This document shows, one piece after another, positions 18,891 through 48,269 of a stretch of DNA of 64,000 bases. The DNA comes from Sminthopsis crassicaudata. Lineage: Eukaryota. Location: positions 71,886,066 to 71,950,065 of the forward strand of contig NC_133623.1 of NCBI RefSeq assembly GCF_048593235.1, given 5' to 3'. Within the stretch, counting starts at the first letter, position 1; every line of letters starts with the position of its first letter. The notes below the pieces were generated by a model. It did no database searches, was not told the origin of the DNA, and was given only the letters and a program-made list of their open reading frames with translations. Position numbers and translations under genes: made by a program.

Positions 18891-20616
18891 TTAGAAGAAA
18901 GATTAGGGATTTTCCAAGCTGGGAAGGGATAAATGAACAGGTTCTCTTTCTGAATTCAGAAAGAGGTGTCCTGCTCCCCCAAAGGAACATAGAAACAATC
19001 ACTGATCAACTTTCCAATAAGACATATGGTTGTTTGAGATGTGTAAGAAAACTCCTTGCATCAATCTTTGGAACTGACTGTTTCTGATCAGCATAGCCTA
19101 GGTCTTGACTAAAGGATCTCTAAGCAGCAGACAGGGATGAGGCAGCTTCCCAGCCATTCTATTCAAACATTGCAGCCCCCATAACTGAATAAAGTTCTCT
19201 CACGGCAAAGAAACAGCCTTAGCATTTGGAACAGAAAGAAATACCTTCATAGGTTTCACTGAGAGGGGACTTGAATCTGACACTAGTCCCTGCTTAAGGG
19301 AAATAACTGTGACGGGGCTGCCAGTAAAGAAATATGTGCCAAGAAGAGACGCGAAAGTGTGGGAGTCCATGTGAGGGAAAATCGTGGTGGGGAGCACTGG
19401 GGTGAAGAAAAGAGGGGCAGCTGCAGTTGGGGACAAATGGAAGAAATGCATTTTGATTATGTAATATAGATGACAAAGCTAGGACACGCTCAGATCACAG
19501 GAGTAATGAGAACCTTTGATCCTCCGGATCTAGTGCCTTTCCACTGATAGTTTAGCTCTCTCAGAAGGCAAAGGGAATCGCAAGGTGGTTTGCTCCAGAC
19601 TTGATTGTGACTCCACAGGGGGTCAAATCCTAGTTTTTCTTACTTTCTCTAGAAAGTATCTCTAGATACTGAGCTTCGGGTTTTGTTTTTTTGTTTTTTT
19701 TTTTTTTTTCCTGGAGGGGGTGGAACTAGAGAGCTCTCAAGGCTCCTTACAACCTGTTGATTTGGGCGATGTCAATTCTAGGACTGAACTCTAGTCTCAG
19801 CACTATTGGTGTGAGACCTTGAACAAGCCCCTTTTCTGGGCCTCTCCCCCCCCCCCCCCTTCCTCAGATGCAGGGATTGAACAGAAGCTTTCTGGAAGGG
19901 ACCTGGAAGTTTTAAAACCTGTCTAACCTGCAAACTTTGGGCTATTATGGGTCTCCATTTCTCTGCAAAAGGAGTGAGAGGGGCTCATTTTCAGGGCAGC
20001 CCACAATTTTAGGAGAGTGCTACCACAAGCAAGCCCCTTCTCTTGTCACAAGGAGGAAGGCTGAGGGGAGATCGGTCCCGGAGAGCCTACCCGGCTTGGG
20101 GTCTAGCCTGAACAGGGTAGTTATATTCACAGGCTCCTCCACCTTCCCGGGACGGGGTGGGCGACCGCTTGCTCCGGGTGGGGGAAGGAGAGACAGGCAG
20201 GGCAGGGGGCATGGGAGGGAGGTTCTCCCTGGGATGGGAGGAAGGAGGGTGGTAGCCCCACATCCATCCAAGGGCATTACTTGGACAAGACGACTTTTGG
20301 GTGGCCCCCTCGGTTTCCTAAATTGAGAGGTCGTTGCACGTGGTGACCCCAAGTTCAGACTTTCCCTTCTTGCCCTCCCCGGGCTCCAGTCTCCCTCTTG
20401 CTACAATGCTTTACACGAGTGTGTACCGGGAGGGAGGGGGGAGGGAGGGAGGTTGTCCTTGAGGACGCTTCCCTCCTACCGTGCGGTTGCTCGAGCACTC
20501 CCCCCCGCCCCTCGCGCGGAAGGTTTTTTCCCCCGCTTCCAGAGACCCGTTAAACCCCTCTCCAAAGCCCCCCCGCCTCGGCGGCAGAAGTGGGCGAGTC
20601 CCTTCCAGAGTCCCAG

Positions 20617-20737
20617 CCAATAGGAACGCGAGAGCAGCTTGGGCGGGGAGGAAAAGGGGGGACAGGGACCCGGATAGGAGCGGCTAGGTGAGAGCGGCGG
20701 GTGTGCGAATCCCGTGACGTCACTAGATCCGACCAAT
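20617..20737 (+). promoter_or_regulatory. HAUS7 core promoter motifs: CCAAT (20617-20621), GC box (~20640-20648), palindromic CRE GTGACGTCAC (20714-20723), CCAAT (20733-20737)
   Basis: Motifs read directly, about 75-195 bp upstream of the ATG. Factor binding (NF-Y, Sp1, CREB/ATF) is inferred. Confidence 0.75.
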
Positions 20738-20812
20738 GAAAAGGCGCACCCTGTGAGCGCGCGGACCCTGCGATCTGTTGGTTCTGTTTGTTGTCCGGTA
20801 GCAGGAGCGACG

Positions 20813-21226
20813 ATGGCCGAGCGTTGGAGCGGATTTGGGGAGGCCGACAGCGATCAGGAGGTGGCGAACGCCAGAAACAGGCAGTGGGAAGAGTTGTGGG
20901 GCACAGAGGAGAACGACTGGGCAGACGAGGAAGACGAGGACGAGGACGAGGAGCCCGAAGACAGGGAGGACGAGGACGAGGAGCCGGAGAGGGACGACGA
21001 AGACGAGGACGAGGACGACGAATGGCAGAGCGTGATCGAGGGGAACTGGGAGGTCGAGGAGGAGGAGGAGGACTACGATTGGGAGGAAGAAGAGCAGCAG
21101 CAGGTGAAGCTGGAGGAGAAGCAGGAGACGACGGTGGTCCAGGACCAACCCGAACAGATGGAGGAGGACGAGGAGGAGGACTCCCAGCTCTCTCTAGAGG
21201 CTCTCCGGGTGCTGGACAGGTTAAAG
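20813..21226 (+). CDS. HAUS7: HAUS7 coding exon 1 (138 codons; long acidic N-terminal extension, then start of the conserved region)
   Basis: ATG in good context (GCGACGATGG) inside the CpG island. Ends SQLSLEALRVLDRLK, which aligns with human SSVSRAAVEVFGKLK (recalled). Donor AAG|GTGCGG, phase 0, in frame with exon 2. Confidence 0.9.
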
Positions 21227-21559
21227 GTGCGGGGCGGAAGGGGCCAGGGCCGCCGCGGCAGAGCGTTTTTAGTGGGAGGGGTGATGCCTAGGCTGAGGAC
21301 GCCGGGTGGGGGCACGGCGAGGTGGGGGGGGGGGGAGAAACTCCAAAGAAGGATGCTGAGGACGGAATGCTGGGTGGGGGGAGACGCCGGGGTGCCCTGG
21401 GGTGGGAATGGGGGTGGGGAGGGAGTCCTGGATCACCAGGGGGTCTACTGCCAGAGAGTCGAGAGAGGAGACTGAGGCCCAGGGAAGGGAGAGGGATTGA
21501 GCGAGCAAACTGTGTTTGAATCTTGCGTCCTTCCAGGTAGTCCTCCGCTGGGCTTGCAG

Positions 21560-23515: not shown

Positions 23516-23631
23516 AGCTTGAACTGTCCATTCATCAAAGGTCTTTATAAAAGTAAGCTGAAGACAGCCAAACAGTTCCTGTGTACTCCTTCAAATTACC
23601 GTTTGGATATTCTGGCATGGTTATTTACACG
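23516..23631 (+). CDS. HAUS7: HAUS7 exon 2 (116 nt) SLNCPFIKGLYKSKLKTAKQFLCTPSNYRLDILAWLFTR
   Basis: Pyrimidine tract with ttcag acceptor; donor CG|GTAATG. Ungapped match to human [39 protein letters not shown]. Confidence 0.95.
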
Positions 23632-29926: not shown

Positions 29927-29994
29927 ATTGCATCCCCCATTTCAAGAATCATTTGACACTTGGCAGGATTCTAATGCTGAAGACAAAATAATAG
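29927..29994 (+). CDS. HAUS7: HAUS7 exon 3 (68 nt) (R)LHPPFQESFDTWQDSNAEDKII(D)
   Basis: Acceptor tttccctttag, donor AG|GTACAA. Phases 2/1 fit exons 2 and 4. Aligns with human VWPSLQDRFSSLKGVPTEVKIQE. Confidence 0.88.
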
Positions 29995-32460: not shown

Positions 32461-32949
32461 AAAACTCCGAACTTGGCCAAAGTCTGCTCAGCAAGCAGAC
32501 TTATTTAATTGCTCCCCTTGGTAGCTATACTTTATTTCCATCGGAGCGACTCAGAAGTCTGTGAATGTTTATACAGCTTCTTAGAATTAGGCCTCGCATG
32601 AGAGGCTTGGACAGGAGGCCCTGCCAAAGCAGAGAATCCAAGAAGCAGACAAAGCCCACCTTCTTGGCCGGGCCAGGGGTAGAGGCTTTCGGGGAGACGC
32701 TTCTGGGTGTGGGTAGGGAAGAGTCAATCATGATTGGTCTCTCCTGGAGGGCCGTCTGTGTGGGTCTATGGCACACATGTACCCTCGGGTGTGCACGCAG
32801 ATGTTACACGTGGTGTTCTGAGGACCAGCCCTGCAGTCAAGGTCTCACAGAGATTTCTCTGTAACCTCCTGTTTGCGCTCCGTCTTTTGGCAGAAATTGT
32901 TCCTGACTCAGTTAGGAACTTTAGGAAAATCTGAGCAAAGTCTCAGCCC

Positions 32950-34520
32950 CTTAAGACGCCGAATAACTTTTCCATTTCAAAACGGACTGGAGGCTGAAGG
33001 CCGCATCTGAAACCAGATGGAGTGGAAGAGGGAAAATCGCGTTGCGCCCCGATTTTGGCCCCGGCCAGCGCCGGCCTAATGAAGCAGATGGGGGCGCTGA
33101 CTCGGTCTCTTCCCGGCCAGGCCTGGGGCAGAGCTGATGCTGAGAACAGCAGCATCCCTGGCTGAGGGGACCCAAGGAGCCCCCTGTGCACGGGCTCAGA
33201 AGTGGCTGGAGTCTAGATGATGATGGAAGAGGAGAGAACAGGAATTCGTTGTTCTTTTTTCAGGAAAGCCATCCCCCTGCCCTTGTGGTCGTAAATCACA
33301 GAGCAGAGACTTCAGCACAAGGGCCAGCGCCAAAGGCAACTGCCCCCCACTTACAGAGACTAGGGTTGAAGGTCCAGAGAGGAGCCGATCCCTTCCTCCC
33401 CAGAAGTCAGTGCGGCGTCAGGCCTGGCTCAGCCAGCCCTCTGACTTCCAGGTTCTTTCCCCAACCACAAGGACACTTCCCCCTCCCCTGTTCTCTCTAT
33501 TGGAGACAATGCAGAAAAGGGGGGCTCTTTTCCGGAAGTTGAGCAATCTGGGATGGAGCAGCCGCTCCAAAGCAGACACGTTGCTGTGGGGGTTGCCCGC
33601 CCCCCCCCTTAACACGCAATTAGGTTGGGAAGAGTTAGTGAGCTACAGAAATGCGGCTGATTCCCATTCTTTGTATTAGGTAGGTCCCCCCCTCCCCCCA
33701 CTCCCATGGCTAGTGACACAGATAAGTGCTCTTACCTCAGTCCTAAGTCCCCGGGACTGGTCATTTGCACTGATTGTCCGGCCCAGGCTGGATTCGGACC
33801 CCCCCTCACTCGTCCCCAGTGTGAGCTCACCTTGGCATTAGCGTTTGTGTGGCTCCCTTCCTGGCACCTCGCCGCCCCCCCCCCCTCCAGAAAGCTGGCC
33901 CTCCTTCACAGCTGTTGCCCTCTGGGAGAAGCACCGGGCATGGGCGTCCCTCCGGCTGGGAGGGCGCCCAGGGCCGTCTGCTCCGAGGGTCTCGTGTTGT
34001 GCACGGGGCCCAAAGTGCGCGGGTGCACGGGGCCCAAAGTGCGGGGATGCCGGGGCCTGCGGGTCGGCTCAGAAGTGGGATCGGAACTCGGCTCTCCTGG
34101 CTCGGCATTCTGGGCCCCAGGAGCTCTCTGCTTCCACTCAGGACCTTGGGAGGCGGCTTCCAGCTCAGGCTCTCACCTCCTCTAGATGAGGAGCCTGGGG
34201 CCAGAGAGGGAAGGAGATTGGCTTGGGCTTTCACAGTTTATGGGGGATTAGTTAGGCCTGGGGGGAGGATTAGCATTCAGAGCCTAGTCCACTCTGGCTT
34301 TGCCTTCTCCCCCCCAGGGCTTCCCCTTGGTCAGTCTGGCGGGGTTTTCTCCCTTTCTGCTCTTCCCTGGAGCTACCTGAGCTCCCACTTGCTGGGCCGT
34401 CCTAACTGTGCTGCCCAAACCCTTCCCTGCACTGAAGGAAGCCCAGCTTCTGTGGGAGACCCGGCTGCTCCTAGCGAGAGTCGGAGACCTGGTGTCGGAG
34501 GCACTGAGCGGCCCTCTCCC
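32950..34520. promoter_or_regulatory. Intragenic GC/CpG-rich island in HAUS7 intron 3
   Basis: CpG-dense non-repeat sequence, densest at 33000-33130 and 33850-34110. Confidence 0.65.
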
Positions 34521-34562
34521 CACCTCATGATGGCAATAACTGGGTCTTTTTCATCTTGGCAG

Positions 34563-34624
34563 ACCTCACTAGGCTTGGTCACAAATTGAAGCTGTGCAGA
34601 CCAGACGATCAGGATCTCATTAAG
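34563..34624 (+). CDS. HAUS7: HAUS7 exon 4 (62 nt) (D)LTRLGHKLKLCRPDDQDLIK
   Basis: Acceptor ttttcatcttggcag, donor AAG|GTAAGA. Matches human EMTKLGHELMLCAPDDQELLK. Confidence 0.95.
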
Positions 34625-34666
34625 GTAAGAGAGAGGACCCGCTCACTCACATATTCCTCCCTTCCC

Positions 34667-35229
34667 NNNNNNNNNNNNNNNNNNNNNNNNNNNNNNNNNN
34701 NNNNNNNNNNNNNNNNNNNNNNNNNNNNNNNNNNNNNNNNNNNNNNNNNNNNNNNNNNNNNNNNNNNNNNNNNNNNNNNNNNNNNNNNNNNNNNNNNNNN
34801 NNNNNNNNNNNNNNNNNNNNNNNNNNNNNNNNNNNNNNNNNNNNNNNNNNNNNNNNNNNNNNNNNNNNNNNNNNNNNNNNNNNNNNNNNNNNNNNNNNNN
34901 NNNNNNNNNNNNNNNNNNNNNNNNNNNNNNNNNNNNNNNNNNNNNNNNNNNNNNNNNNNNNNNNNNNNNNNNNNNNNNNNNNNNNNNNNNNNNNNNNNNN
35001 NNNNNNNNNNNNNNNNNNNNNNNNNNNNNNNNNNNNNNNNNNNNNNNNNNNNNNNNNNNNNNNNNNNNNNNNNNNNNNNNNNNNNNNNNNNNNNNNNNNN
35101 NNNNNNNNNNNNNNNNNNNNNNNNNNNNNNNNNNNNNNNNNNNNNNNNNNNNNNNNNNNNNNNNNNNNNNNNNNNNNNNNNNNNNNNNNNNNNNNNNNNN
35201 NNNNNNNNNNNNNNNNNNNNNNNNNNNNN
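34667..35229. other. Assembly gap (N run); other gaps at 986-1177, 12183-12416 and 49643-50078
   Basis: N runs in the sequence. Confidence 1.
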
Positions 35230-36418: not shown

Positions 36419-37421
36419 GAAGACATTGTTCCCTTTAGACTAAACTAGGCTTCTAGGCAACTGGATATCCATTACTCCGAGTTCTATCCTCTGAGGACCA
36501 AGAAAAATAAAAACCAGCCTCGTTGTCTGTAATAGAAGAGCCTGTCAGATACATGAAGACAACCCTCATGTTTCCTTTCATCCCTGGCCCACCAATTCTC
36601 CATTTCCACCTTTTCCTCACGCGGGCTTATCTCGAGGCCCCTTGCCGCCTTGGCCATTTACTTGAGTATGTTCTCCTTCTGGTACTGAGGAGACTGGGAT
36701 ACCCACAACTCACCACCTCATAGTCCAGCTGGGCCCTTCCAAGGACACGATGCAGAGCTGCCTCCATCTCCTCCGTCCTGGCCACCGGGACTGTGTTCAT
36801 GCAACCCCAAACCACCTCAACTCTGCTCGCAGGGCACGTTCTTGATACACATGACCCCATCAACCACCAGATTCTTACCAGATAGACTAATGTTTAACTA
36901 GTTCTCCCCGATGGGAGACTTAGGAGATTGTTTTTTAAAGGAAAATTAAGTCATGGCACTGAATCCAGTGCAATTCCATCTTAGAGTTAAAGCTAAATTC
37001 TAGCCAGTCATGTTTAGATTCTGGAAGGGACTAGTGGAAATGAGGATGCTATGTTTGTCTTTGCTTCTGCTGCCTCCTAAAAAGCCTGGCTGTATTACTT
37101 TTGAACACAGTTATTATATAATAGTTTTGTATGTTTCCAACGTCCGCTTTCACTTCCCCAATAACTGTGGGTGAAGTGAGACAGGTGTCGTTATTCCCAA
37201 TTTTCAAAACAGGAAACCGAGGCCCCAGAACCTAAGGTGTCTCAAGGTTTCACAGTTAACAGCTCTAAACGCAGGTTCTCTGACTTCCCACCCAGAATTC
37301 TTTCCAGCACGCCACAGAACATGAGGCACTGAGTTTGGAGAATAAGAGGTGCTGGTGAAAGCTGGTCTCTTTGTGGTCTTATATTTGTTCAACAAAAGAT
37401 GTTTGTGTGTTCTTTTTACAG

Positions 37422-37516
37422 GGCTGTACCCAGGGGAAGCGACAACTTGGATTCATGAACGAAGCAATGAATCTGATAGAAAGTTTGAGCTCTGAATTTA
37501 GTGACAAGTGTGCCAG
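37422..37516 (+). CDS. HAUS7: HAUS7 exon 5 (95 nt) GCTQGKRQLGFMNEAMNLIESLSSEFSDKCA(R)
   Basis: Acceptor tctttttacag, donor AG|GTAAAA. Matches human GCACAQKQLHFMDQLLDTIRSL. Confidence 0.9.
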
Positions 37517-38280
37517 GTAAAAAGCCAGGGGATGCTCTCCTGGGAGATCCTGGAGAGAACTGGTAGAGGGGGTGGGAGTGAGGAGATGCACTTTACACCC
37601 TTTTATTTTGGTTCTGTTCTCTCAGGCTGAGATGTGTAGATTCGCACAGTTGGAAAGGATTGTAGAGGTCATACAATAAAACTTCCCACCCAAGGCAGGA
37701 ATCCAGGCCTGACTTCAGAGGGCGACTCCCCTTCTGTCCCATCAGGGCTTATAGGTGATGAAACTACATGAATAAACAGATACTTAATGAGCAACAGGGC
37801 CTAGCCCTGGGCTCTGGGGGAGACCAAGAACATTATACATGGCCCCTGGTTTCAAAGAGTTAACATAGAGAGAACATATGTTTGTGAAAAATTAAGTAGC
37901 ACTCTGGAAGGAGAGAAAAAAGGATAGAAGAGAAAATAACGCTGGGCAATCTGGAACGGATTGCTCCATGAATGGCCTGGCCAGTGAAGCTCTTAGGGTT
38001 TGGAGGAAGGCTCTTGTCACTGAGCCGGAAGGGTCAGCATGGTTTGGGGACCAATGGGAGCTGGATCGGAGAGGCTGGGCTTCTCGGGAGCTGGGGTTTC
38101 GAATGAAGGCATTTCCTCCATGAAACCGAGGGTTGTCCAAAGTTTGTGTCTGGCACTCAGATGAGGCTGAAGCCTGGTATGGGGAAGGGTGTGGTCCTCA
38201 TTTACCCCACCTCTGACTCTGGGAAATTGCTTTTGAGTTGGATTGGCCTCAGTGGGACATCATCATGATCCCATTTGCAG

Positions 38281-38428
38281 AATGAACTTGAACATCTGTG
38301 ACTTAATGAAGAAAAAAATGATGTTAACAAAATCCAAATATACCTCAGGAGATCAGAGACCCCAAGTCAAACCCTTTCCTTCCAGTAGTAGAGCCCCATT
38401 CTGAAAAGAAGGAAAATGTTTCTGAAAA
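38281..38428 (+). CDS. HAUS7: HAUS7 exon 6 (148 nt as assembled; contains an apparent 1-nt frameshift)
   Basis: Acceptor ccatttgcag, donor AAA|GTATGT. The 3' part in a shifted frame (QEIRDPKSNPFLPVVEP) aligns with human QMLLNPECDPWPLDMQP. The entry frame hits TGA at 38402-38404. Confidence 0.7.
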
Positions 38429-40179
38429 GTATGTGCTTGAGGGCCTGGAAAAGGAACCCCTATGGCTAGAGGCCTCGAGTGGCCTGCAGGTCCAGATGCT
38501 GTAGCTGAGTCAGCGTTCTGCAGCAGACTCATCCTCAGGGATACTACAAAGAATGCTTGACTCTATAACAGATGACTTGGGGACACCAATTTAAGTAAAA
38601 ATCAAAACCACCTAACACAAGTTCCCTCTTGTCCCTGTGGGAGTATCTGCCCCTGTAAAGAAGGGTGACCCAACGTCCATTGGCTCAGGTTGGGCCTTAG
38701 GCCACTGATGCGTTCCGAATCGGTGCCGTAGTGTGGCACATAAATCGCACGAGCTAAGATAGGCTGGTGAGGGGAAGAAGGCTGAGCAGGGGGGAGTCGG
38801 GGGGCAGGAGAGAACAGAGTTTCCTTTCAGGGCTCTTGATAAAAATTCCACCCAGTCTTGGGCGATTGAGAGACCTGGCAGCTTCTCACTACTATCAGTG
38901 TGAGCTCTGGCCAAGAAACCGGAGGTAGCTGGGCCATCTCCCATCATCTGGCCACTGTACCCAGATGGCTCTGGAGGGGAAGGTGAGGCAGGTGACTTTG
39001 CCTGGATTAAATCGAACTCAATGGCATGTCATTGCATCTCCTCCCTGATGTCAAAAACGAAGGGCAAACAACAGCAGCAACAGCGATGACAGCTACAAGT
39101 ACCACCACATCTGGTAGGCCAGGCCACTGTGCCAAGGGACAAGGCTCAATTTTTCTCTGGACTGCCTCAGGCACATAGAAAAGGAGAGCCGCCATAATGC
39201 TGATGACCAGCACGTTTCATGTATCAGAATTTACAAAGGACATGTTCCTTTGGTACTTTAAAGTAAGAGATGTGCAGGTTATTTTTACATGAGAAAACTG
39301 AGGGTGAAGTAGAGGGAAGGACTTGCCCAAGGTCACATAGCCAGTAAAGTGGCAGAGCCAGTTCCCTCTTTTCACAACTCTCCAGCAGGGATCCTGGGGA
39401 CCATCTGGCTGGAGTCACTGTTTGGTCCTCAGCTTTTTAGCAAGCAACAGCCATGTTTCTGGGGCCTAGTACCTAGGAAGCGCTTCACACATACTTGTGG
39501 ATTGAATGGATGGCCTCCTTTTGGGGGAGCCATCTTCCTGGGCCTTGTGCCTTAAGGAGCCCTGCAGTATAGACTGGCAGTGACTGACAGGGCATAGGGA
39601 GAAGCTTTTGTGAGAGGCTGCCCCTTTCCAGAGCCCTAAGCCGCCCCTGCCCCCGCCTAAGATTTTCATACACACAGAGCATCCCTCAGCCCTGCCAAGC
39701 ATCCTCTGTAGAGCATCCCTCAGGCTTCATGTCGCCCTTTTGGAGACACGGGAAGGAACAAAGAGCTCTGCTGCCGCTTTCCTTCCCTCATCCTCCCATC
39801 CCCAACAGCGCTGGTTTTGTGAACGCTTTCTGTCCCTTGCTTGATGTTCTCGTGCTCCCTCCCCGGGGACCTAATGCATGCCCATGGTAGTCACTGGTGA
39901 TTCCTCTTCCTACCTGGAGAGCCCCTCAGAGAAGGGACTCTTCATTTTGTAGCATGGAGTCTGCTTCTGGGAAGGAGATCTGTTCCTGGTCCCCTCCTGC
40001 CCCAAGGAGATCTATTCCTCGTCCTGTCCCGAGAAGGAGATCTGTTCCCCGTCCTGTCCCGAGAACGTTTTCATTCCACCCCTGTGGTCCTTGTACGTGC
40101 CATCACTCTCACCTGACCTTGGCCCCATCTGTTTGTGGGCAGGGGTATGCTTAGGAAGCTGACTTGCTTCTCCTTCCAG

Positions 40180-40294
40180 GCCCGTTCCTTCCAGGCCCTC
40201 TCCTCCCAAACCACTGGGGGCAAAGATCAAGGTGGAAGAGCTTTCTGAAAAACTGAATAAACTCACTGAAATGCTGCAGGCACACAAGGAAGAG
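40180..40294 (+). CDS. HAUS7: HAUS7 exon 7 (115 nt) PVPSRPSPPKPLGAKIKVEELSEKLNKLTEMLQAHKEE
   Basis: Acceptor tgcttctccttccag, donor GAG|GTGAGA. Coiled-coil aligns with human KLAELARQLQESAAKLHALRTE. Confidence 0.85.
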
Positions 40295-40415
40295 GTGAGA
40301 GAAGCAGGGGAAGGAGGAGAGCGCGGGGTCCCCGGGAATGTGGGATGACATGAATTGGGAGAAGATGAGGGACTAGGATAATGGAATTTACCGCTGCCGG
40401 CTCTCCCTCCCCAAG

Positions 40416-40481
40416 GTCCTCTGCCGTCAGGAGGGCACCAGTAGGCTGTTTTCACCAAATCCCGCCGGATTCCCCAAGAAG
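40416..40481 (+). CDS. HAUS7: HAUS7 exon 8a (66 nt) VLCRQEGTSRLFSPNPAGFPKK
   Basis: Acceptor ctctccctccccaag, strong donor AAG|GTGAGT. Phase 0/0 bridges exons 7 and 8b. Only weak similarity to human YFAQHEQG. Confidence 0.6.
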
Positions 40482-41108
40482 GTGAGTAACCCGATTCTGG
40501 GGGAGCTAAAGAGGTGGTTCCATAGAAGCTGGAAGGTGAGATCCCTTTCAGATCTTGGGAAAGCTTTCCACTCCTTAAACACTTCTGTGCGCCAGACATT
40601 GGGGACATAAGGACAGTCAGTTCCTGCCCTTGAGGAGTTTATGTTTATGTTCTGCTGAAGTAACGGTCTCTGGCCTCTGGAATCGAGTTCCTCCAGCCAC
40701 TGACCTGCATTGCTTGCCAACCCTGTGTGTTCCTTACCTTGATTCCCTTTCATATGGGGAACTGGGTTGGCTTGCCTCCCCCACTTGAGTAAAAGGTCAT
40801 TGAGGGCAAGCGTTATCTGCTGTTTGTCTTTGTAACCTGGTGCCTTGTCCTCAGCTGCTGCATCAGTGGGTCCTTCTGTAGCCCCCACAGCGCAGCCCCA
40901 AGAGCCCAGGAAGTATTCAGTCAATACTTGTTGGTTCCACTGGAGCTTGCACACATGCATTCATGCCCATTTGTAAGACTGAGGGAGAAACTGAGGTCCA
41001 CGTGCTGCCTGTTGTATCAGTGTGATCCAAGGCAGTGGGGGAGCCCCCAACAAGGTTCTTGGAAGCTCACAGAGTGAAGGCCTTGATCTCTTGTGTCTGG
41101 TTTTGCAG

Positions 41109-41288
41109 CCTTCTTCCCACTGTGGGAAAATCTCCAGCCAAGGTAGCGGCACCTTATTTCCATTCATAGTTTTCATAGACATTTATGAGAATGAGCTTCA
41201 TGAGTTCTGTGATCACCCAACCCCCAACATCAACCCTTGTGGTCCATTATTTCAATCTATAAATGAGACGCTAATGCTCTTGAACCAG
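41109..41288 (+). CDS. HAUS7: HAUS7 exon 8b (180 nt) ending FIDIYENELHEFCDHPTPNINPCGPLFQSINETLMLLNQ
   Basis: Acceptor ctggttttgcag, donor CAG|GTAAGC. Matches human [39 protein letters not shown]. Confidence 0.92.
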
Positions 41289-41454
41289 GTAAGCCCCATG
41301 TGACCTCCCTCCTGGCCCCTCCCTGATGAACTTCAGTCTGAACTGGGACTTGTCATCAGCTCCTGCAGACAGTAACCTCTATGGTCATGATGATGTTCTC
41401 AGGGCCAGGAGGCTCCCCTCCCCTATTGTCCAGAGTATGTCCCAAAGGAGATTT

Positions 41455-43480
41455 TACCCCCTTTTTTAAATATAAAATTTTATTTACATATTTTGTTTAT
41501 CATATCACTAGCATTTTTCCTAGTATCCCTCCATTTGCTCCTCTCCAAAAGTCATCTCATATTACAAATATTTTTGAAGAATTAAAAAGAGGAGGGGGAA
41601 AATAGCAAAAATGATCAATAATAGAAAAAAATTCCAATGTACACAATGTAATCACATATAGACCTCCCCCCTCTGAAGCTTGCTTCTCATCTTTTTACAG
41701 TCACTCTTCTTTTTTGTAATTTTGTAAAATTCACTTTTGATTGTTTTGTGTTGGATTTTTCTACTTCTGATGTATAGTTATGTTTATTTTTTTCTTGCAT
41801 TTATTTACTTCACCATATCAAATCATGTAAACCTTTCCATGCTGCTCTCCATTCATCATATTCACCATTTCACAGTAATATTCTGTTATATTGATGCAGC
41901 ACAATTTGATTAACCATTCCCCAATCCACGGTCCTTTATTTAGTTTTCATTTCCTTGTTGTCACAAAAAAAGTGCTGCTTTAAATATTTTGGCATTTGGG
42001 ATTTTCTTCTTGTCAGTCACCTCATTAGTGGATATGTCTAGCATTGGAATCTTTTGATCAAAAATTATAGATATTTTAGTCACTTTATTTGCTTAATTTA
42101 ATTGCTTTTCTAAAAGATCATAGTGATTCACAGCTCCACCAACAATGCATTAGTGTGCCTACTGCCTTACTCTCTCCAACACTGACTCTTGCAATTTTCC
42201 ACTATTTTTGCCAATTTGCACGTTGTGAGGTTGTTGCTTGTTGTACTTCAGTCTTTCTTTGATGTACAGTTGTCTTACTGTTTCAATACACATACAATGA
42301 GACCTAAGTTTTTCAAAGTTGCTTGTACATAAACTTTTAAATTTTATGCAATCATCTATCTATTTTACCTCCTGTGAGCTTCTCTATCTCATGTGGAATC
42401 TTTGGCTTTCTCATACACCAAATCATATACATATTCATTTGCTCCTGTATATTACGTACCTAATCTATTCCATTGCTCTATTTCTTATATAGTACCAGAT
42501 TATTTTAATGATTATGTCTTTATATAGTATAGTTTGGTATCTAGTATTGCTAGGCTCCCTACCTTCTCACTTTTTTATAAATTAATTTTTAAATTATTCA
42601 ATTTAATTCAAATTCAATTTAAGTTAATCAGATGAGCTTTGTTGTTTTTGATTAATTCTTTTGGTGGCTCCATTAGTATTTCATTGAATAAGTTAATCGA
42701 TATATACTTTTTATGATTTTAAAAAAGGTCCATTTTTGCCTATACTTCATAAGGTTTTTAGCATAAATGAATGGTGGTGTACTTTATTGGAAACTTTTTC
42801 TGTATCAGATTAATCATGTGGTTTTACAGGTTTTTGTTTTTAGTATGAATATTAACTGTTTTCTTAATGTTTAATCTTTGCATCCCTACTATAAATCCAA
42901 TTTGGTTATGACATGATTTCTTGAATTAACTTCTATCATCCTATTTGACAGGATATTTTAAAATTTTGAAAGTTTTGAGAATAATTTATGTAGTATTTTT
43001 ATGTAAAAAGAATATAAACTTTAAAAGTTTGATGATGTTGTCACATGATTTTTAAAAGCTTGGCACGAACTTCACACCTTGAACAAAATTGCATGTTTAT
43101 CAACAGTTTGTCTTATTTAATTATTCATAATTATTCATTGTTCTATGATTTGTTCTTTTACTCTCTAAGATTTAATTCATGTTTCCTTCAGGTGTGTATC
43201 TTTTCTTTGTGCTCCCTGAACTGCTTATTGTTTTTACTCCATTATGGTCTATAAGATTTGTGATTTGTCTTGTTTCTTACCAAATGTAAAGTTTCCAGGA
43301 AAACAGAAACTAATACAGATGGCATCAAGCCCAAATAGAAACAGATCTTTGTGGACCATGTATTGATTTAGAAAACCACAATGAACATCATCTATTTTGT
43401 ATTGTATTGGAATTTATTTGATTAAACATTTCTTAATTACATTTTAATCCACTTAAGGATGTACTGCATTATAGGCTGTT
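41455..43480 (-). mobile_element. Old, fragmented L1 (3' UTR and ORF2)
   Basis: T-rich antisense L1 text (ccattccccaat..gtgctgct..agtatagtttg..ctattttacctcctgtg). Confidence 0.75.
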
Positions 43481-43857
43481 TGAAACCTGCATGCTGTGGG
43501 AGTTTGATACCTCTGCTATAATCTATGGGAGTATGAACATCACAAAAGAACATGGAAGCAGAAGAAGAATATGGGAACCTGGGGAGAAAGGTGTAGGGGA
43601 AGAATAATGGGGGGTTGTAACACATTGGAAATATTTGGGGCTTTCATGGGAATCCACAAGTAAGGAAGGTCCCCTCTTTTAGGGGGGCTGAGACTGATGT
43701 CTAGCAGACTTGGAGTAGAGGAACAAAACCCTAGTATTAAGGGATTTACCATGGATGATTAGTCCCAGTGGAAGGGATGAGATCCAGGGCAGGGCAGGGC
43801 ATTTTCAGGGCTGACATTCCCAGCATGAAGACATTTGTTTCTGTGCTTCTTCCATAG

Positions 43858-44020
43858 AACATGAAAGCTGTAACTGAAGCAAAAACTACTTCTATGAATG
43901 TGGAACAGGAGCAAGCCTGTTTGAGCGGAGGCGACTGCATGATGACTTTGGGGAGGCAGTCTCTGCTTCCTAAACCAGTGACAACCCAAGCTACACAGCA
44001 TGGCGTCCCCTCCTTGGAAA
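43858..44020 (+). CDS. HAUS7: HAUS7 exon 9 NMKAVTEAKTTSMNVEQEQACLSGGDCMMTLG...; 3' end uncertain (43951 homologous, 44020 first usable phase-1 GT, or stop at 44043)
   Basis: Acceptor cttcttccatag. Aligns with human VMAVADTSAKAVETVKKQQGEQICWGGSSSVMSLA. The homologous donor reads G|GGAGGC. Confidence 0.75.
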
Positions 44021-44987
44021 GTGAATTAGGGACATCTCCCTAATGGCTACGACTCAGTGATACATCTGGCCTACCACTCATCCATAATAGAAAAAAAAAA
44101 TAATGATAATCATTTATGTAGCACTTTAAGGTTTGCCAAGCACTTTGCCAGTTATATGTTGTTCAGTTCTCAATTCTGAAAGGGTCATACTGCTGATTTC
44201 TGAGAAAGTCTTCTCTTAGTTACACAAGGAAGGCTCTAATGGTCCCATCTCAGAATGAAGAGTCTATCTTCTAGATCAAAGGGTACATGAAAGCCAGACT
44301 CATGCTCTAAGCTTTCCATTTTCCATAGAAACTAGCACTCTGTACAAATGCTCATTTTTTATAAATTTAGCTCAGTTCCCTTTATATTTCAGAAGTGACA
44401 TCCTTATCAGAGAAACTTGCTGTGAAAAATTTCCCCCAGTTTCCTGCTTTTCTTCTAATTAATGGTTTTGTTTCTGCAAAAAAACCTTTTAATTTCATGC
44501 AATCGTAATTATCAATTTTGCCGCCACTTATCTTTTATCTATTTATATCCAAATATCTATTATTTGGATATAAATTCTTCCCTGATCCATAGATTTAACA
44601 GATAAATTTTTCCATGTTCCTCTAATTTGCTTATAATAGCATTTATGTCTAAACCATCTATCATTTTGACTTTTATTTTGATATATGATATGAGATGTTG
44701 GTCTTTGCCTAGTTTCTGCAAAACTATCTGGTTTTCCCTGGCAGTTTCTGTCAGATATTGGGTACTTGACCTAGTAGCTTGGATCTTTGTATTTATCGAG
44801 CATTAGGTTATTATTTTCATTTACTATTGAGTATTGTTTACCTAATTTATTCCATGACCTTCCACATTGTTTTTTATCCAGTACTAAATTGTTTTCATGA
44901 TATGGCTTTGTAATAATAAAGTTTAAAAGGCTGCCTTCCTTTCTTATTGTTTTTTACATTTCTTTTTCATTCATTCCCTTGATAATC

Positions 44988-45140
44988 TTTTTTTTTTCTA
45001 TTGCTCAGGCAATTGGGGTGAAGTGACTTGCCCAGGGTCACACAGGTAAAAAGTGTTAAGTGTCTGAGACCAGATTTGAACTCAGGTCCTCCTGACTTCA
45101 GGGCTGGTGGCCTATCCACTGGGCCACCAAGCTGCCCCCC
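44988..45140 (-). mobile_element. WSINE1-like SINE within an old antisense L1 (44330-45450)
   Basis: Poly(T) at 44988, reverse-complement head ending agctgcccccc. Confidence 0.85.
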
Positions 45141-46599
45141 AACCTCCCATATTCTTAACATTTTGTTCTTTCAGTTGAATTGTTATTAGGTTTTCTAGAT
45201 AAATATCTAAATATATAATTTAAAATAATTCCTTGGTAGTATGACAGGCATAAAAATGAGTAACTCAATTAATTTAGGCAATATTGCCATTTTTATTCTA
45301 TTGGTTTGGCCTACCGATTGGTGTTTCTCTAATTGTTTAGATCTTTGTTTGAAGACTGTATTTTGGCAGTTTGGTTCCCAAGTATATTATCTGCAGTTAT
45401 TTTAAGTTGAATTTCTCTTTCTCTTTCTGCTGGGTTTTATATTGAGATGGCTTAATATCTGTGTGTTGAATGAATATATCAGGACCTGGGAATGATCAGG
45501 AGTCCATCTGGGATTCTGGGATGTGGCCCCTCTAAGTGTACTAGAGTTCTATTCTTTCTCTCTTCTCTTGGCTTTGCTTGCAGAGAATTAATTAGATGAC
45601 CAACTATTTAGCCCCTCTGCTTCTCCAAAGCAGGTTAAAGAGGGCAAATCAGCTCCAAGTGTAGGACTGTTTCCAAGAGGAGGAAGAGAAGTAAGGGATG
45701 AAAGAGGGATCAAGAAGGGGAAGTTGAACAGATTTTTGATTCTTTCTGACTCAGTTCCAGTGCACAATGTGGCTTCATTATTTTGTTTGAAGTAGATTCT
45801 TGGAATATCACACTTTGCCAGAGTTTCATAGAAGGATAAAATTCATTCCCAAGTCATGCCAGACTTAGTGGATAATTGAATGCTCTGGTGGTACCCATGG
45901 CCTCTGCTCCCCTCATGGCAGCTGGTTGGGAGATGGCTCTTCCCAGCTCTGGGAAGTTTCCTCATTAGGACAGATTGAACATCTGGCAAGTGCCTTTCCT
46001 TCTCAGCGTTCTGGTTTTCCCACCACTGACATGATTAGTTGTCATCTTGAACTTCTGTGAAGTAGCTCCCTTCCCAATAGAACAAGCAAACAGTACCATT
46101 TCCGGGGTGCTATTGTCCTCTCCTTTTTCAAAGCTAAGCAGCTGCTTTGGGGTAAGACTGTCAGTTTTTCCCCTCTCCCTAATCCTGTCCCTAAAAGAAT
46201 GTTAAAAAGTCAGGGTCACACGTGGACAGAAAGGATCCCAGATCCTCGAATGGCTATTTACTAGAGAAGGGACATCAGGCAAGCCTCTATACCTCTCTGA
46301 GCTTCAACTGAGTCACCTAGACAAAGGGGTTGGACTAATGTTTGATAAGGTCCCTCCCAGCTCCAAAAATCTGGCCCAGGAGGAAAGTGCTTTGAAAACG
46401 TTCCTGGGAGTGGTATTTTGTATCTTTGGGGGCAGCGGGTTTGGGGCTGCCGTATTCATTCGACAAAGGTGGTGGGTCTCGTGCTCAATGCTGGGAATAC
46501 GAGTATTGTCGAGGACTCAGACTACCACGAAGGAGCGGCTATTTTACTGGCCTGGGATGGGGGCAAGAAGGGCCGGTGTAGTCCCAGATACTTGGACAT

Positions 46600-47700
46600 T
46601 TTAAGGTGGCATTCAAGAAGAGAGCGAGACAAAACGAAGATCGGTAAAGGGAGAGCCTGTAGCTCGGGGTGGGGTCGGCGTGGCAGAGTGGGAGATGGCA
46701 TGGAGGCCATCAGGAAAGACTGGACCCAAGATTTGGCACCTGAACAAAGAAGGTTCAAAGGCCGAGGGTGAGAGGAGGACATGCCAAGTGTGGGGGCGGG
46801 GGGAGACAACCTAGGCAAATAGCTAAAGGCTGGAGAGGGGCTGCTGAATTCAGGGGGCAGCTAAGAGTCCAGTTTGGCTGGAATTTCACCCTGCCGGGTG
46901 AAATAAGCCTGGACAGAGGATGGCGAGATTGTGGAGGACCTTCAAAGCCAGGCTGAGAGTCCCTGTTCCATCCTGTAAGTGGAAGGGAGCCACGGGAGGA
47001 TGTGGAGCAATGGAATGCCCTGATCAAAACCGTGCCTTAGGAAGCTTCTTTTGGCAGCCTGATGAGTGAGGCCTCGGACAGGGCAGACCCTGGAGACGTG
47101 ATCTCCCCGGGGACGTGGCATCGGTCCTCCGGGAGAGAGGCCGTCCAAGGCACATCTAGTCCACGTTTCCTCCATCCTTGTAGAATGAATGGGAAGCCAT
47201 GAGAGGCTGAATCAGGGAACCCAAAGAAGGGCAGGCAGGTGTCAGGAGAGAGCAGAGGGGGAGGATGGTTGTAGAACTTTGATTTTTATTGGATCATGGG
47301 GGTGGAGAGAAGGAAGAGTCAAAGACTGGATCAAAGGGGCTGGAGCATGGAGGTGCCCTCAACAGAAAAGGGGGAGCGCCTGTAGGGAGGAAGATGAGGA
47401 GGCACGCAGCCTTGACTTCAGTAAGTCTCAGGGGCCACCGGGGCCTCCCCGGAGGTAGTGGCCTAGGGGCAGAGCTGCAGGTGAGAGATGAGAGGGAAGG
47501 AGATGCCTTAGGCCGGGATGTGTAGGTTTCAGGGTCACCTGCATAGAGCTGAGGGAACCTATGGAAGGGAAGGAGCTCACCGAGGGAGAGGAGAAGAGGG
47601 CTTAGAACACCCCCCATTCTAGGGAAGCCCCCAGTTAGAGAGCAAGGAGGAGGACAATGAAGACAACTGAGAGACTGGCCATACAGGTAGAACCTGTAAG
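46600..47700 (-). mobile_element. L2 fossil (CpG-rich)
   Basis: Antisense L2 blocks (gattgtggaggaccttcaaagccaggctgag; gggagccacgggagg; gagaagagggcttagaacacccc). Confidence 0.7.
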
Positions 47701-48125
47701 GGTCAAGTCATGGAAACCTCACTGGGGAGAGCCTGGCGTGGGGTGGGGTGGGGTAGGTTTGGGATGGGCTCAGTGACAGATGTTGCAGTGGTTTGTAGGG
47801 GGAGGGAGACTCGACAGAAGCCCTTGGAGGGCCTCAATGACCTTTAGGGGGAGGGGATTCAGTAGAGTGGGGGCTCCGGGAGCAGTCAGTGGGGGCTTAG
47901 GAATCACCAAAGGTCTTTCTCAGACTCAGCAGGTCGGTGTCAGGGTCCACGGCAAAGCTAGTTTTCTTTGCCTGGGGCTTGGGTTCTCAAGCTGGGGAGC
48001 TCTGAGCGAGCTTTGGACACTGGGAAGAGAGCCCAGCTTGGGGCCGTTAGGGGGCAATGCTCCATGGGAGCAAGAACCCCGCACTCCTGCAACTTCTTAA
48101 TATTCTCTCTTCTCCCCGTTGCCAG

Positions 48126-48199
48126 CTGAGAAAATGAAGGCGTTAATGCAGAAATATGAACTCCTCCAAGACAGTCCTCAGACATCCAATGCAGTATGA
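48126..48199 (+). CDS. HAUS7: HAUS7 terminal coding exon (x)EKMKALMQKYELLQDSPQTSNAV*
   Basis: Long pyrimidine tract with gccag acceptor, phase 1. Matches the human C-terminus ATKMNELMEK. Confidence 0.85.
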
Positions 48200-48269
48200 A
48201 CAAAAGCTAAGCATCCATCCCTCAGTCCTCAGCTCCTTGTGTTTGGGAAACGAGGGGGAAGACGTTGGT

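What the first reader, a model, noticed from the sequence alone, without database searches (positions are those of the whole stretch)
20813..21181. HAUS7 carries a ~120-aa hyper-acidic N-terminal extension
Seen: exon 1 encodes 138 aa, 66 of them D/E, with an internal 30-bp tandem duplication (20936-20995, EDEDEEPEDR/EDEDEEPERD). Established: human HAUS7 has only ~20-30 residues before the aligned region (recalled). HAUS7's N-terminal CH-like domain is part of augmin's microtubule-binding end, together with HAUS6 and the basic HAUS8 tail. Inference: a tubulin-E-hook-like acidic tail at this position could compete for the basic microtubule-binding surfaces and tune branching nucleation in this lineage.
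Basis: partly seen in the sequence, partly recalled or inferred. Interest (0 to 1): 0.7.

Follow-up and report, generated by a model that had tools for sequence, protein, structure and literature searches.

The report
Acidic-tailed marsupial HAUS7 paralogue
The hyper-acidic first exon is real and conserved, but it belongs to an old, fast-evolving marsupial-only extra copy of the spindle gene HAUS7, not to the standard HAUS7, and it is a stretched version of a shorter acidic tail that all marsupial HAUS7 copies carry.

Summary
Exon 1 (20813-21226, +) encodes 138 aa with 66 D/E, and the tail before the first helix has net charge -57. It contains an imperfect ~27-30-nt repeat.

The gene belongs to the HAUS7 family (PDB hits to human and Xenopus HAUS7). 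However, marsupials have three old HAUS7 clades:
- A: has introns and lies next to TREX2, so it is the positional orthologue.
- C: an intronless retrogene.
- B: has introns and evolves fast.

The window gene is clade B. B tails have 118-144 aa before the CPF motif (54-70 D/E; tammar 40), against 48-81 aa in A, 62-82 in C, 34-43 in eutherians and 17-25 in most other vertebrates. The extreme tail is therefore specific to marsupial clade B, not to "HAUS7 in this lineage".

The ATG at 20813 is supported. It is conserved in A and B, has a good Kozak context and follows an in-frame stop. Tail dN/dS is about 0.3, all indels are in frame, and the downstream Met is absent in Antechinus and Sarcophilus.

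Clade B has also lost parts of the 3' end. Exon 6 is dead, every annotated B model skips exon 9, and the exon 10 donor is destroyed in dasyurids. B probably lacks part of the segment that binds the other half of augmin.

The electrostatic-brake mechanism remains an inference.

The parts
20400..21200 (+). CpG-island promoter region around exon 1, with a TGACGTCA (CRE-like) match at 20715-20722 and CCAAT matches at 20617-20621 and 20733-20737
   Evidence: GC is 0.62-0.65 and CpG observed/expected 0.8-1.0. Positions 20640-20812 are almost identical to the Antechinus clade-B locus. The motif matches are consensus hits read from the sequence, not shown to function.
20813..21226 (+). Coding exon 1 of the clade-B HAUS7 paralogue: 138 aa, 66 D/E
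   Evidence: A at -3 and G at +4 around the ATG. There is an in-frame stop at 20675-20677 and no upstream in-frame ATG. The GT donor is at 21227. The exon aligns in frame with Antechinus, Sarcophilus, Trichosurus, koala and tammar clade-B proteins.
20813..20920 (+). N-terminal anchor (aa 1-36, MAERWSGFG...ARNRQWEELWGTEENDW), shared in part with clade A
   Evidence: Alignment A4. M1, A2, G7 and A18 are invariant across A and B; W5, W25 and W29 are shared by most sequences.
20921..21166 (+). Clade-B-specific acidic insertion (aa 37-118), absent from clade A exon 1
   Evidence: This stretch is gapped in all clade-A rows of alignment A4. D/E codons are 36 GAG, 20 GAC, 8 GAA and 2 GAT.
20936..21009 (+). 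Imperfect tandem repeat (EDEDEEPEDR / EDEDEEPERD ...)
   Evidence: TRF: period 27, 2.6 copies, 87% matches. Ungapped 30-nt units match at 22 of 30 positions.
21020..21052 (+). Non-repetitive conserved island EWQSVIEGNWE inside the acidic tract
   Evidence: Kept in Antechinus, Sarcophilus and Trichosurus, and partly in koala and tammar.
21167..21226 (+). C-terminal anchor EEEDSQLSLEALRVLDRLK, the start of the helix that leads into the CH domain
   Evidence: Invariant or nearly invariant in A and B. It is helical in the AlphaFold model of the Antechinus orthologue, where pLDDT rises to 88-95.
23516..23631 (+). Exon 2 (SLNCPFIKGLYKSKLKTAKQFLCTPSNYRLDILAWLFT-)
   Evidence: Matches human HAUS7 7sqk_G residues 44-85 at E 3.5e-11 and Xenopus HAUS7. 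Splice sites.
29927..29994 (+). Exon 3
   Evidence: tblastn with clade-B proteins; boundaries and phase.
34563..34624 (+). Exon 4
37422..37516 (+). Exon 5
38281..38429 (+). Exon 6 relic: the homologous peptide is split over two frames (frameshift)
   Evidence: The same exon carries an in-frame stop in Antechinus and is skipped in its annotated protein P0001. It is intact in koala and Trichosurus.
40195..40294 (+). Exon 7. A second in-frame acceptor lies at 40180, created by a 15-nt duplication.
40416..40481 (+). Exon 8
41109..41288 (+). Exon 9 homologue (hinge and start of the C-clamp). It is open here with good splice sites but lacks 8 aa relative to clade A. Whether it is used is unknown.
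   Evidence: Hits human HAUS7 280-320 and Xenopus 250-286. It is skipped in all annotated clade-B proteins, frameshifted with stops in Antechinus, and not detectable in Trichosurus clade B.
43858..44043 (+). Exon 10 read through to a clade-B-specific C-terminus (...SLLPKPVTTQATQHGVPSLESELGTSP, then stop)
   Evidence: The donor is GT in Sarcophilus clade A but GG here and in Antechinus clade B.
48126..48196 (+). Exon 11-like sequence (AEKMKALMQKYELLQDSPQTSN), probably no longer joined to the transcript
   Evidence: 82% identical to the C-terminus of Sarcophilus clade-A protein P0011. It is not part of any clade-B protein model.

Best explanation
Exon 1 is the translated first exon of a marsupial-specific, intron-containing paralogue of HAUS7 (called clade B here). 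The paralogue arose before the split of American and Australian marsupials. The exon encodes an intrinsically disordered N-terminal tail of about 125 aa, 51% D/E, net charge -57, lying just before the helix that leads into the HAUS7 calponin-homology (CH7) domain.

The tail is an expanded form of a shorter acidic tail found in all marsupial HAUS7 copies, and of a small acidic patch in eutherians. It grew by in-frame gain of GAG/GAC-rich sequence between two conserved anchors, MAERW...WEELW and EEEDSQLSLEALRVLDRLK. It has since been kept under moderate purifying selection, with conserved Trp-containing islands.

The clade-B protein keeps CH7 and the first coiled-coil helix, which form the N-clamp part of augmin subcomplex TII. 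Its 3' end has been remodelled: exon 6 is dead in dasyurids, exon 9 is skipped or broken, the exon 10 donor is lost, and a new C-terminus results.

Inferred and not shown: if B assembles with HAUS2/6/8, its tail would add a large negative charge next to the basic HAUS8 N-terminus and the basic HAUS6 CH surface. This would weaken or gate microtubule-lattice binding by electrostatic repulsion or intramolecular competition, as described for the acidic tail of EB1. Loss of C-clamp sequence could also loosen its link to the TIII half of augmin.

My estimates: identity and coding status about 0.85-0.9; the electrostatic mechanism about 0.25.
For: Family:
- Exon 2 and the exon 9 homologue hit human and Xenopus HAUS7 chains.
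- The AlphaFold model of the Antechinus orthologue has a confident CH domain (pLDDT 88-98). Its best Foldseek matches are augmin HAUS7 chains 8fck_G and 8at3_G.

Paralogy:
- The ML tree gives three starred marsupial clades, each holding American and Australian species, together sister to eutherians. Clade B has a long stem of 0.47.
- Clade C is a single 1152-nt exon in Antechinus.
- Clade A in Sarcophilus is followed by an RNase_T (TREX2-like) gene.
- The window is colinear with the Antechinus clade-B locus at 81-90% nt identity.

Tail distribution.

Start codon and coding:
- Conserved ATG and N-terminal motif.
- The promoter and ATG are almost identical in Antechinus, and the single indel is 9 nt.
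- dN/dS is 0.32, from 12 synonymous against 24 nonsynonymous differences, Fisher p = 0.005.
- The Met at ~21158 is GTG in Antechinus.

Disorder: pLDDT is 41-66 over residues 1-112 of the orthologue.

Intact frame: with the exon set of the annotated Antechinus protein, the window gives 368 open codons.

3' remodelling.

Structural context:
- In Xenopus HAUS7 the N-clamp is residues 1-270 and the C-clamp 271-348 (PMC9512787).
- The CH7 surface is negative and its role unclear (PMC12373997).
- The EB1 acidic tail suppresses lattice binding by electrostatic repulsion (PMC3154886).
Against:
- No protein for this gene from the window's own genome appeared in the protein searches, so it may not be annotated as coding there.
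- Clade B evolves fast and has lost exons, which also fits decay.
- The tammar clade-B tail is much less acidic (40 D/E and 21 K/R in 137 aa), so extreme acidity is not strictly required.
- dN/dS rests on a single species pair and 36 differences.
- Nothing here shows that B enters the augmin complex or touches HAUS8 or microtubules.
Confidence: 0.6

Rival explanations
1. Neutral low-complexity growth in a redundant, decaying copy. Clade B would be an expressed pseudogene or on its way to becoming one, and the acidic tract would be replication-slippage debris with no function.
For: - Clade B has a long stem and long end branches in the tree.
- Exon 6 is dead in the window (frameshift) and in Antechinus (stop).
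- Exon 9 is broken in Antechinus and not detectable in Trichosurus.
- The exon 10 donor is lost.
- The tammar tail has lost much of its acidity.
- The database holds no protein model from the window's genome.
Against: - An open frame with the same exon usage and a conserved start and C-terminus is kept in dasyurids and diprotodonts, and clade B includes Monodelphis.
- All tail indels are in frame.
- Tail dN/dS is 0.32, p = 0.005.
- Conserved Trp islands lie inside the tract.
- The CpG-island promoter is almost invariant between two dasyurid genera.
Confidence: 0.2
2. One reading: the lineage's single HAUS7 has gained an E-hook-like tail that tunes branching nucleation by the canonical augmin complex.
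For: The tail is real, and it sits at the microtubule-binding end of augmin (PMC9512787).
Against: - The gene is one of three paralogues. Clades A and C are full-length and are the likelier canonical subunits.
- Annotated clade-B proteins lack the exon that spans the hinge and the start of the C-clamp.
Confidence: 0.08
3. The tail is untranslated. Translation would start at the downstream Met (~21158) or in a later exon, and the acidic frame would be 5' leader.
For: There is no direct evidence of translation. All three frames of this GC-rich exon are fairly open.
Against: - The downstream Met is absent in Antechinus and Sarcophilus.
- The upstream ATG, its context and the first ~30 residues are conserved across clades A and B.
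- The frame is preserved and dN/dS is below 1.
Confidence: 0.05
4. The tail is a docking module: acidic-aromatic short motifs recruit a basic or Trp-binding partner, for example kinesin-1 light chain via W-acidic motifs, importins or histone-like proteins. It would not act as an electrostatic brake on microtubule binding.
For: The 138 aa contain seven Trp, most of them conserved within clade B and flanked by D/E. PMC12373997 suggests that the negative CH7 surface may recruit partners.
Against: The kinesin light-chain pattern (hydrophobic, D/E, W, D/E) is met only by YDWEE in the window. In Antechinus and Sarcophilus the same site is EDWED, so it is not conserved. Pfam finds no family in the exon.
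Confidence: 0.07

Closest known systems
Vertebrate HAUS7 (human chain 7sqk_G; Xenopus chains 8at3_G and 8fck_G)
   Same: The CH7 domain and first coiled-coil are homologous. The exon-intron layout is the same. A short acidic patch precedes the first helix in eutherians.
   Different: About 90-120 extra N-terminal residues with net charge -57. The exon that spans the hinge and start of the C-clamp is skipped or damaged in clade B. The C-terminus is new. The gene is not beside TREX2.
Marsupial HAUS7 clade A (for example Sarcophilus P0011, Sminthopsis P0005, Monodelphis P0013)
   Same: Same two anchors in exon 1 and the same gene structure. It also has an acidic tail, up to 26-30 D/E in 49-65 aa in dasyurids and wombat. 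In dasyurids the 3' half is about 83% identical at the DNA level.
   Different: Clade A lacks the ~80-aa insertion, keeps exons 6, 9 and 11, and sits next to the RNase_T/TREX2-like gene.
Acidic C-terminal tail of EB1/EB3
   Same: An acidic disordered tail on a CH-domain microtubule-binding assembly. It lowers lattice binding by long-range electrostatic repulsion (PMC3154886).
   Different: The EB tail is about 20 residues, C-terminal and ends in EEY. There is no sequence relationship. The analogy is functional only and was not tested here.
Long acidic disordered tracts such as those that earned the Antechinus orthologue the automatic name 'nucleolin-like'
   Same: Composition only: runs of D/E encoded by GAG/GAC repeats.
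   Different: No RNA-binding or other nucleolin domains are present. Everything beyond exon 1 is HAUS7. The database name is a composition artefact.

Membership tests
HAUS7 (augmin subunit 7) family | Significant sequence similarity to HAUS7 across the N-terminal domain and the C-terminal helices | tested here: met
   Exon 2 against 7sqk_G, E 3.5e-11. Exon 9 homologue against 7sqk_G and 8at3_G, E ~3e-6. Profile hits.
HAUS7 (augmin subunit 7) family | Calponin-homology-like N-terminal fold followed by a coiled-coil | tested here: met
   Tested on the Antechinus orthologue P0001, not on a joined window model. The CH region has pLDDT 88-98 and there is a helix at 258-292. Foldseek top hits are 8fck_G (E 3.6e-9) and 8at3_G (E 1e-8).
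HAUS7 (augmin subunit 7) family | C-clamp segment that binds the TIII subcomplex (Xenopus HAUS7 271-348) | tested here: inconclusive
   The exon 9 homologue is open in the window but lacks 8 aa. The exon 10 donor is GG. All annotated clade-B proteins skip exon 9 and end in a new C-terminus. Exon usage in this species is unknown.
HAUS7 (augmin subunit 7) family | Assembly into the augmin octamer | not testable with these tools
   Needs co-purification or complex modelling.
Positional orthologue of eutherian HAUS7 | Lies next to TREX2 on the same strand | tested here: not met
   No RNase_T-like open frame lies in the 16 kb downstream or 20 kb upstream in the window. The clade-A gene of Sarcophilus has an RNase_T gene 10 kb downstream.
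Processed retrocopy | Intronless coding sequence | tested here: not met
   The window gene has at least ten exons spread over about 27 kb. By contrast, clade C in Antechinus is one 1152-nt exon.
Electrostatic autoinhibitory acidic tails (EB1-like) | Disordered, strongly acidic tail on a complex that binds microtubules through basic surfaces | tested here: met
   51% D/E and net charge -57. Low pLDDT over the tail. Basic HAUS8 N-terminus and basic CH6 surface according to PMC12373997.
Electrostatic autoinhibitory acidic tails (EB1-like) | Removing the tail raises microtubule binding | not testable with these tools
   Needs co-sedimentation or TIRF assays with and without the tail.
Kinesin-1 light-chain W-acidic motif | Conserved [L/M/hydrophobic]-[D/E]-W-[D/E] in an acidic context | tested here: not met
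   Only YDWEE in the window fits. The aligned site is EDWED in Antechinus and Sarcophilus.

The most novel reading that the evidence does not exclude
Clade B is a natural 'N-clamp-only' HAUS7. It would still pair with HAUS2/6/8 at the microtubule-binding end but be uncoupled from the gamma-tubulin-recruiting half of augmin, and it carries a -57 charge tail. It would then act as a built-in, possibly tissue-specific, regulator or antagonist of branching microtubule nucleation in marsupials. It would also offer a natural experiment on the unexplained conserved negative charge of the HAUS7 CH domain.
Probability: 0.15. Interest if true: 0.7.

Novelty: new variant of a known kind. Interest (0 to 1): 0.45.

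Why it matters
Augmin is required for building the spindle, and the role of the HAUS7 CH domain and its conserved negative surface is still open (PMC12373997). Marsupials turn out to carry three old HAUS7 genes. One of them has amplified that negative charge several-fold while shedding part of the segment that ties it to the rest of the complex. If expressed, it is a ready-made natural variant for testing how charge at the microtubule-binding end of augmin sets binding and branching.

There is also a practical point. The gene is mislabelled in public annotation ('nucleolin-like', 'uncharacterized protein'). The apparent frameshift in an 'essential' gene noted on this window is explained by paralogy and exon loss.

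I found no paper on these paralogues in the library searched.

Tried and rejected
- Pfam on exon 1: no family at E up to 1.
- PDB sequence search with exon 1: only chance acidic matches.
- Word search with the read-through open frame from the ATG: this worked and gave the first orthologues.
The start site, splicing and tissue expression were not checked.
- Exact look-ups of P0020, P0005 and P0009 found no gene on record. As a result, the distance between clades A and B on the chromosome, and exon 1 of the Monodelphis clade-B gene, remain unknown.
- A second HAUS7 copy or TREX2 inside the window: none found.
- Kinesin light-chain W-acidic motif: considered and rejected because it is not conserved.
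- Retrocopy origin of the window gene: rejected, because it has introns.
- A recent slippage origin for the 30-nt duplication: rejected, because the same peptide repeat is present in Antechinus and Sarcophilus.
Exons were searched one by one by reference and only their lengths and phases were added up. The tree and the structure use database orthologues instead, so the window row itself is not in the tree.

Full report
**1. Observation**

The + strand has an ATG at 20813 with A at -3 and G at +4. An in-frame stop lies at 20675-20677 and no in-frame ATG lies between them. The frame runs for 138 codons to 21226 and is followed by GTGCGG.

The peptide has 44 E and 22 D, 66 acidic in all, against 10 K/R. 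The part before the first conserved helix is 125 aa, 51% D/E, net charge -57, with seven Trp. The D/E codons are mostly GAG (36) and GAC (20).

Tandem Repeats Finder describes the array as period 27, 2.6 copies, 87% matches, at 20936-21009.

The exon sits in a CpG island: GC 0.63, CpG observed/expected 0.8-1.0 over about 20400-21200.

**2. What gene it is**

Exon 1 alone gives nothing in Pfam or the PDB. The next exon (23516-23631) matches human HAUS7 chain 7sqk_G residues 44-85 at E 3.5e-11, and Xenopus HAUS7. A later open frame (41109-41288) matches human 280-320 and Xenopus 250-286. The gene is therefore HAUS7-family.

A word search with the open frame from the ATG found two proteins with the same tail: a 366-aa Antechinus flavipes protein named 'nucleolin-like' (P0001) and a 307-aa sequence (P0002). 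P0002 shares its exon 2 peptide with a Sarcophilus UniProt entry.

Searches with the core of P0001, and then with a profile, recovered many marsupial and eutherian HAUS7 proteins.

**3. Three marsupial HAUS7 clades**

A maximum-likelihood tree of 38 proteins, using the region from the CPF motif onward, puts all marsupial sequences in one group, sister to the eutherians. Inside that group are three well-supported clades, each with American and Australian species.

- Clade C is a single 1152-nt exon on a 265-Mb chromosome in Antechinus, so it is a retrogene.
- Clade A has introns. In Sarcophilus it is followed 10 kb downstream by an RNase_T-domain gene, the arrangement expected for HAUS7-TREX2, so it is the positional orthologue.
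- Clade B has introns, a long stem (0.47) and long end branches.

The window's exons are of clade-B type: 88% identical to Antechinus B in exon 2, against 47-55% to clade A. The window is colinear with the Antechinus clade-B locus through exons and introns at 81-90% nt identity.

The window therefore comes from another dasyurid. Its placement rests on the exon-by-exon comparisons.

**4. Distribution of the tail**

| Group | Residues before the CPF motif | D/E |
|---|---|---|
| Clade B | 118-144 | 54-70 (tammar: 137 aa, only 40 D/E and 21 K/R) |
| Clade A | 48-81 | 10-34 |
| Clade C | 62-82 | 17-24 |
| Eutherians | 34-43 in ordinary models | 3-10 |

 Human has 49 residues before the motif.

A profile search of 1.84 billion representatives gave 42 full-length HAUS7-like proteins. 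Their median is 22 residues before the motif, and none outside marsupials has an acidic run. Named examples are snakes, turtles, alligators, lungfish, sharks, bichirs and clupeid fish.

The alignment of exon 1 peptides shows what happened. Clades A and B share the first ~30 residues (MAERWxGxGDSDxDQ..ARNR.WEE.W) and the last ~20 (EEEDxQLSLEALRVLDRLK). Clade B has about 80 extra residues between them. These consist of acidic runs plus islands such as DW, EWQSVIEGNWE and DWE that are conserved between dasyurids and Trichosurus.

The extreme tail is thus a clade-B character at least as old as the dasyurid-diprotodont split. Whether American clade-B genes have it is unknown, because the only opossum model starts in exon 2 and its locus could not be fetched.

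**5. Is the tail translated?**

- The ATG, its context and the promoter are almost identical in Antechinus.
- The only indel in the exon is 9 nt, and indels among all clade-B tails are in frame.
- Between the window and Antechinus the tail has 12 synonymous differences in about 57 sites and 24 nonsynonymous in about 318. That gives dN/dS 0.32, Fisher p = 0.005.

These points favour translation from 20813.

**6. The rest of the gene**

Taken exon by exon, with the exon set of the annotated Antechinus protein (1, 2, 3, 4, 5, 7, 8, 10), the window gives compatible phases and 368 open codons.

- Exon 6 (38281-38429) is split over two frames here and carries a stop in Antechinus. It is skipped in P0001 and intact in koala and Trichosurus.
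- Exon 9 corresponds to the hinge and start of the C-clamp of Xenopus HAUS7 (N-clamp 1-270, C-clamp 271-348; PMC9512787). Every annotated clade-B protein skips it. It is frameshifted with stops in Antechinus and undetectable in Trichosurus clade B. In the window it is open, with good splice sites but an 8-aa deletion, so its use here is undecided.
- The exon 10 donor is GT in Sarcophilus clade A but GG in the window and in Antechinus clade B. This forces read-through into a C-terminus (...SLLPKP...ESELGxSP) that is conserved across clade B.

The AlphaFold model of P0001 has a low-confidence N-terminus (pLDDT 41-66 to residue 112, with one weak helix at 12-34). It also has a confident CH domain (143-250), one long helix (258-292) and a disordered C-terminus. 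Its best structural matches are augmin HAUS7 chains.

**7. Mechanism**

Shown: a conserved, selected, disordered, hyper-acidic tail immediately before CH7 in a paralogue that keeps the N-clamp part of HAUS7.

From the literature:
- The N-clamp (HAUS2/6/7/8) is the microtubule-binding unit.
- Binding is carried by the basic HAUS8 N-terminus and the basic HAUS6 CH domain.
- The CH7 surface is negative and its role is unclear, perhaps balancing electrostatics or recruiting partners (PMC12373997).

Inferred: the tail multiplies that negative pole. It would either repel the acidic microtubule surface or occupy the basic HAUS8/HAUS6 elements, lowering or gating lattice binding, much as the EB1 acidic tail does (PMC3154886). 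I give this about one chance in four.

Alternatives are a docking role for the acidic-aromatic islands and near-neutral growth in a redundant copy. The selection signal and the age of the tail argue against pure neutrality, but the exon losses and the less acidic tammar tail keep that option open.

**8. Novelty and verdict**

The gene family is known, and acidic low-complexity tails are common. What seems undescribed, at least in the paper library searched, is two things: the triplication of HAUS7 in marsupials, and a paralogue that combines an amplified acidic tail with a remodelled C-terminus.

I rate it a new variant of a known kind, of moderate interest. Its interpretation is partly supported and needs the correction that this is a paralogue, not the lineage's HAUS7.

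Noticed in passing
L004:5001-6152 (Antechinus); proteins P0025, P0027-P0032: Marsupials carry an old intronless HAUS7 retrogene (clade C) on a large autosome-sized chromosome. It is conserved from opossum-like species to Australian ones. It has short branches and a mixed K/E tail of its own.
   Followed up: partly
window 37200-48300 against L003 (Sarcophilus clade A) and L001 (Antechinus clade B): The 3' half of the window gene, introns included, is about 83-84% identical to the Sarcophilus clade-A locus, roughly as close as to the Antechinus clade-B locus (84-89%). The 5' part is only 69-75% identical to clade A. This suggests gene conversion between A and B in dasyurids. It also fits the species-specific residues that A and B share in exons 7-9.
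   Followed up: partly
window 38281-38429: The exon 6 homologue is frameshifted here and has an in-frame stop in Antechinus: independent lesions in an exon that the annotated dasyurid protein skips.
   Followed up: yes
window 41109-41288: The exon 9 homologue is open, with good splice sites, but is 8 aa shorter than in clade A. In Antechinus the same exon has two frameshifts and stops. The Sarcophilus sequence P0002 joins exon 2 directly to it in another frame.
   Followed up: partly
window 40165-40195: A 15-nt tandem duplication (TTCCAGGCCC...) creates two in-frame acceptor sites for exon 7. A Sminthopsis clade-A isoform shows the longer PSRPSPPKPLGAK version.
   Followed up: no
window 32500-34660: A second GC-rich, CpG-island-like block with long open frames lies inside the intron before exon 4, just before an N gap (34667-35229). 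It could be an internal promoter or simply GC-rich repeats.
   Followed up: no
P0001, P0008, P0026 (database proteins): Public names are misleading. The Antechinus clade-B protein is called 'nucleolin-like' and the tammar one 'uncharacterized protein'. A Dromiciops model fuses a HAUS7 copy to basal body-orientation factor 1.
   Followed up: no
proteins P0016-P0019 (Trichosurus, tammar, Petaurus): Several diprotodonts have further clade-A-like copies on different large chromosomes. These are species- or family-level duplicates that pair up in the tree and may be younger retrocopies.
   Followed up: no
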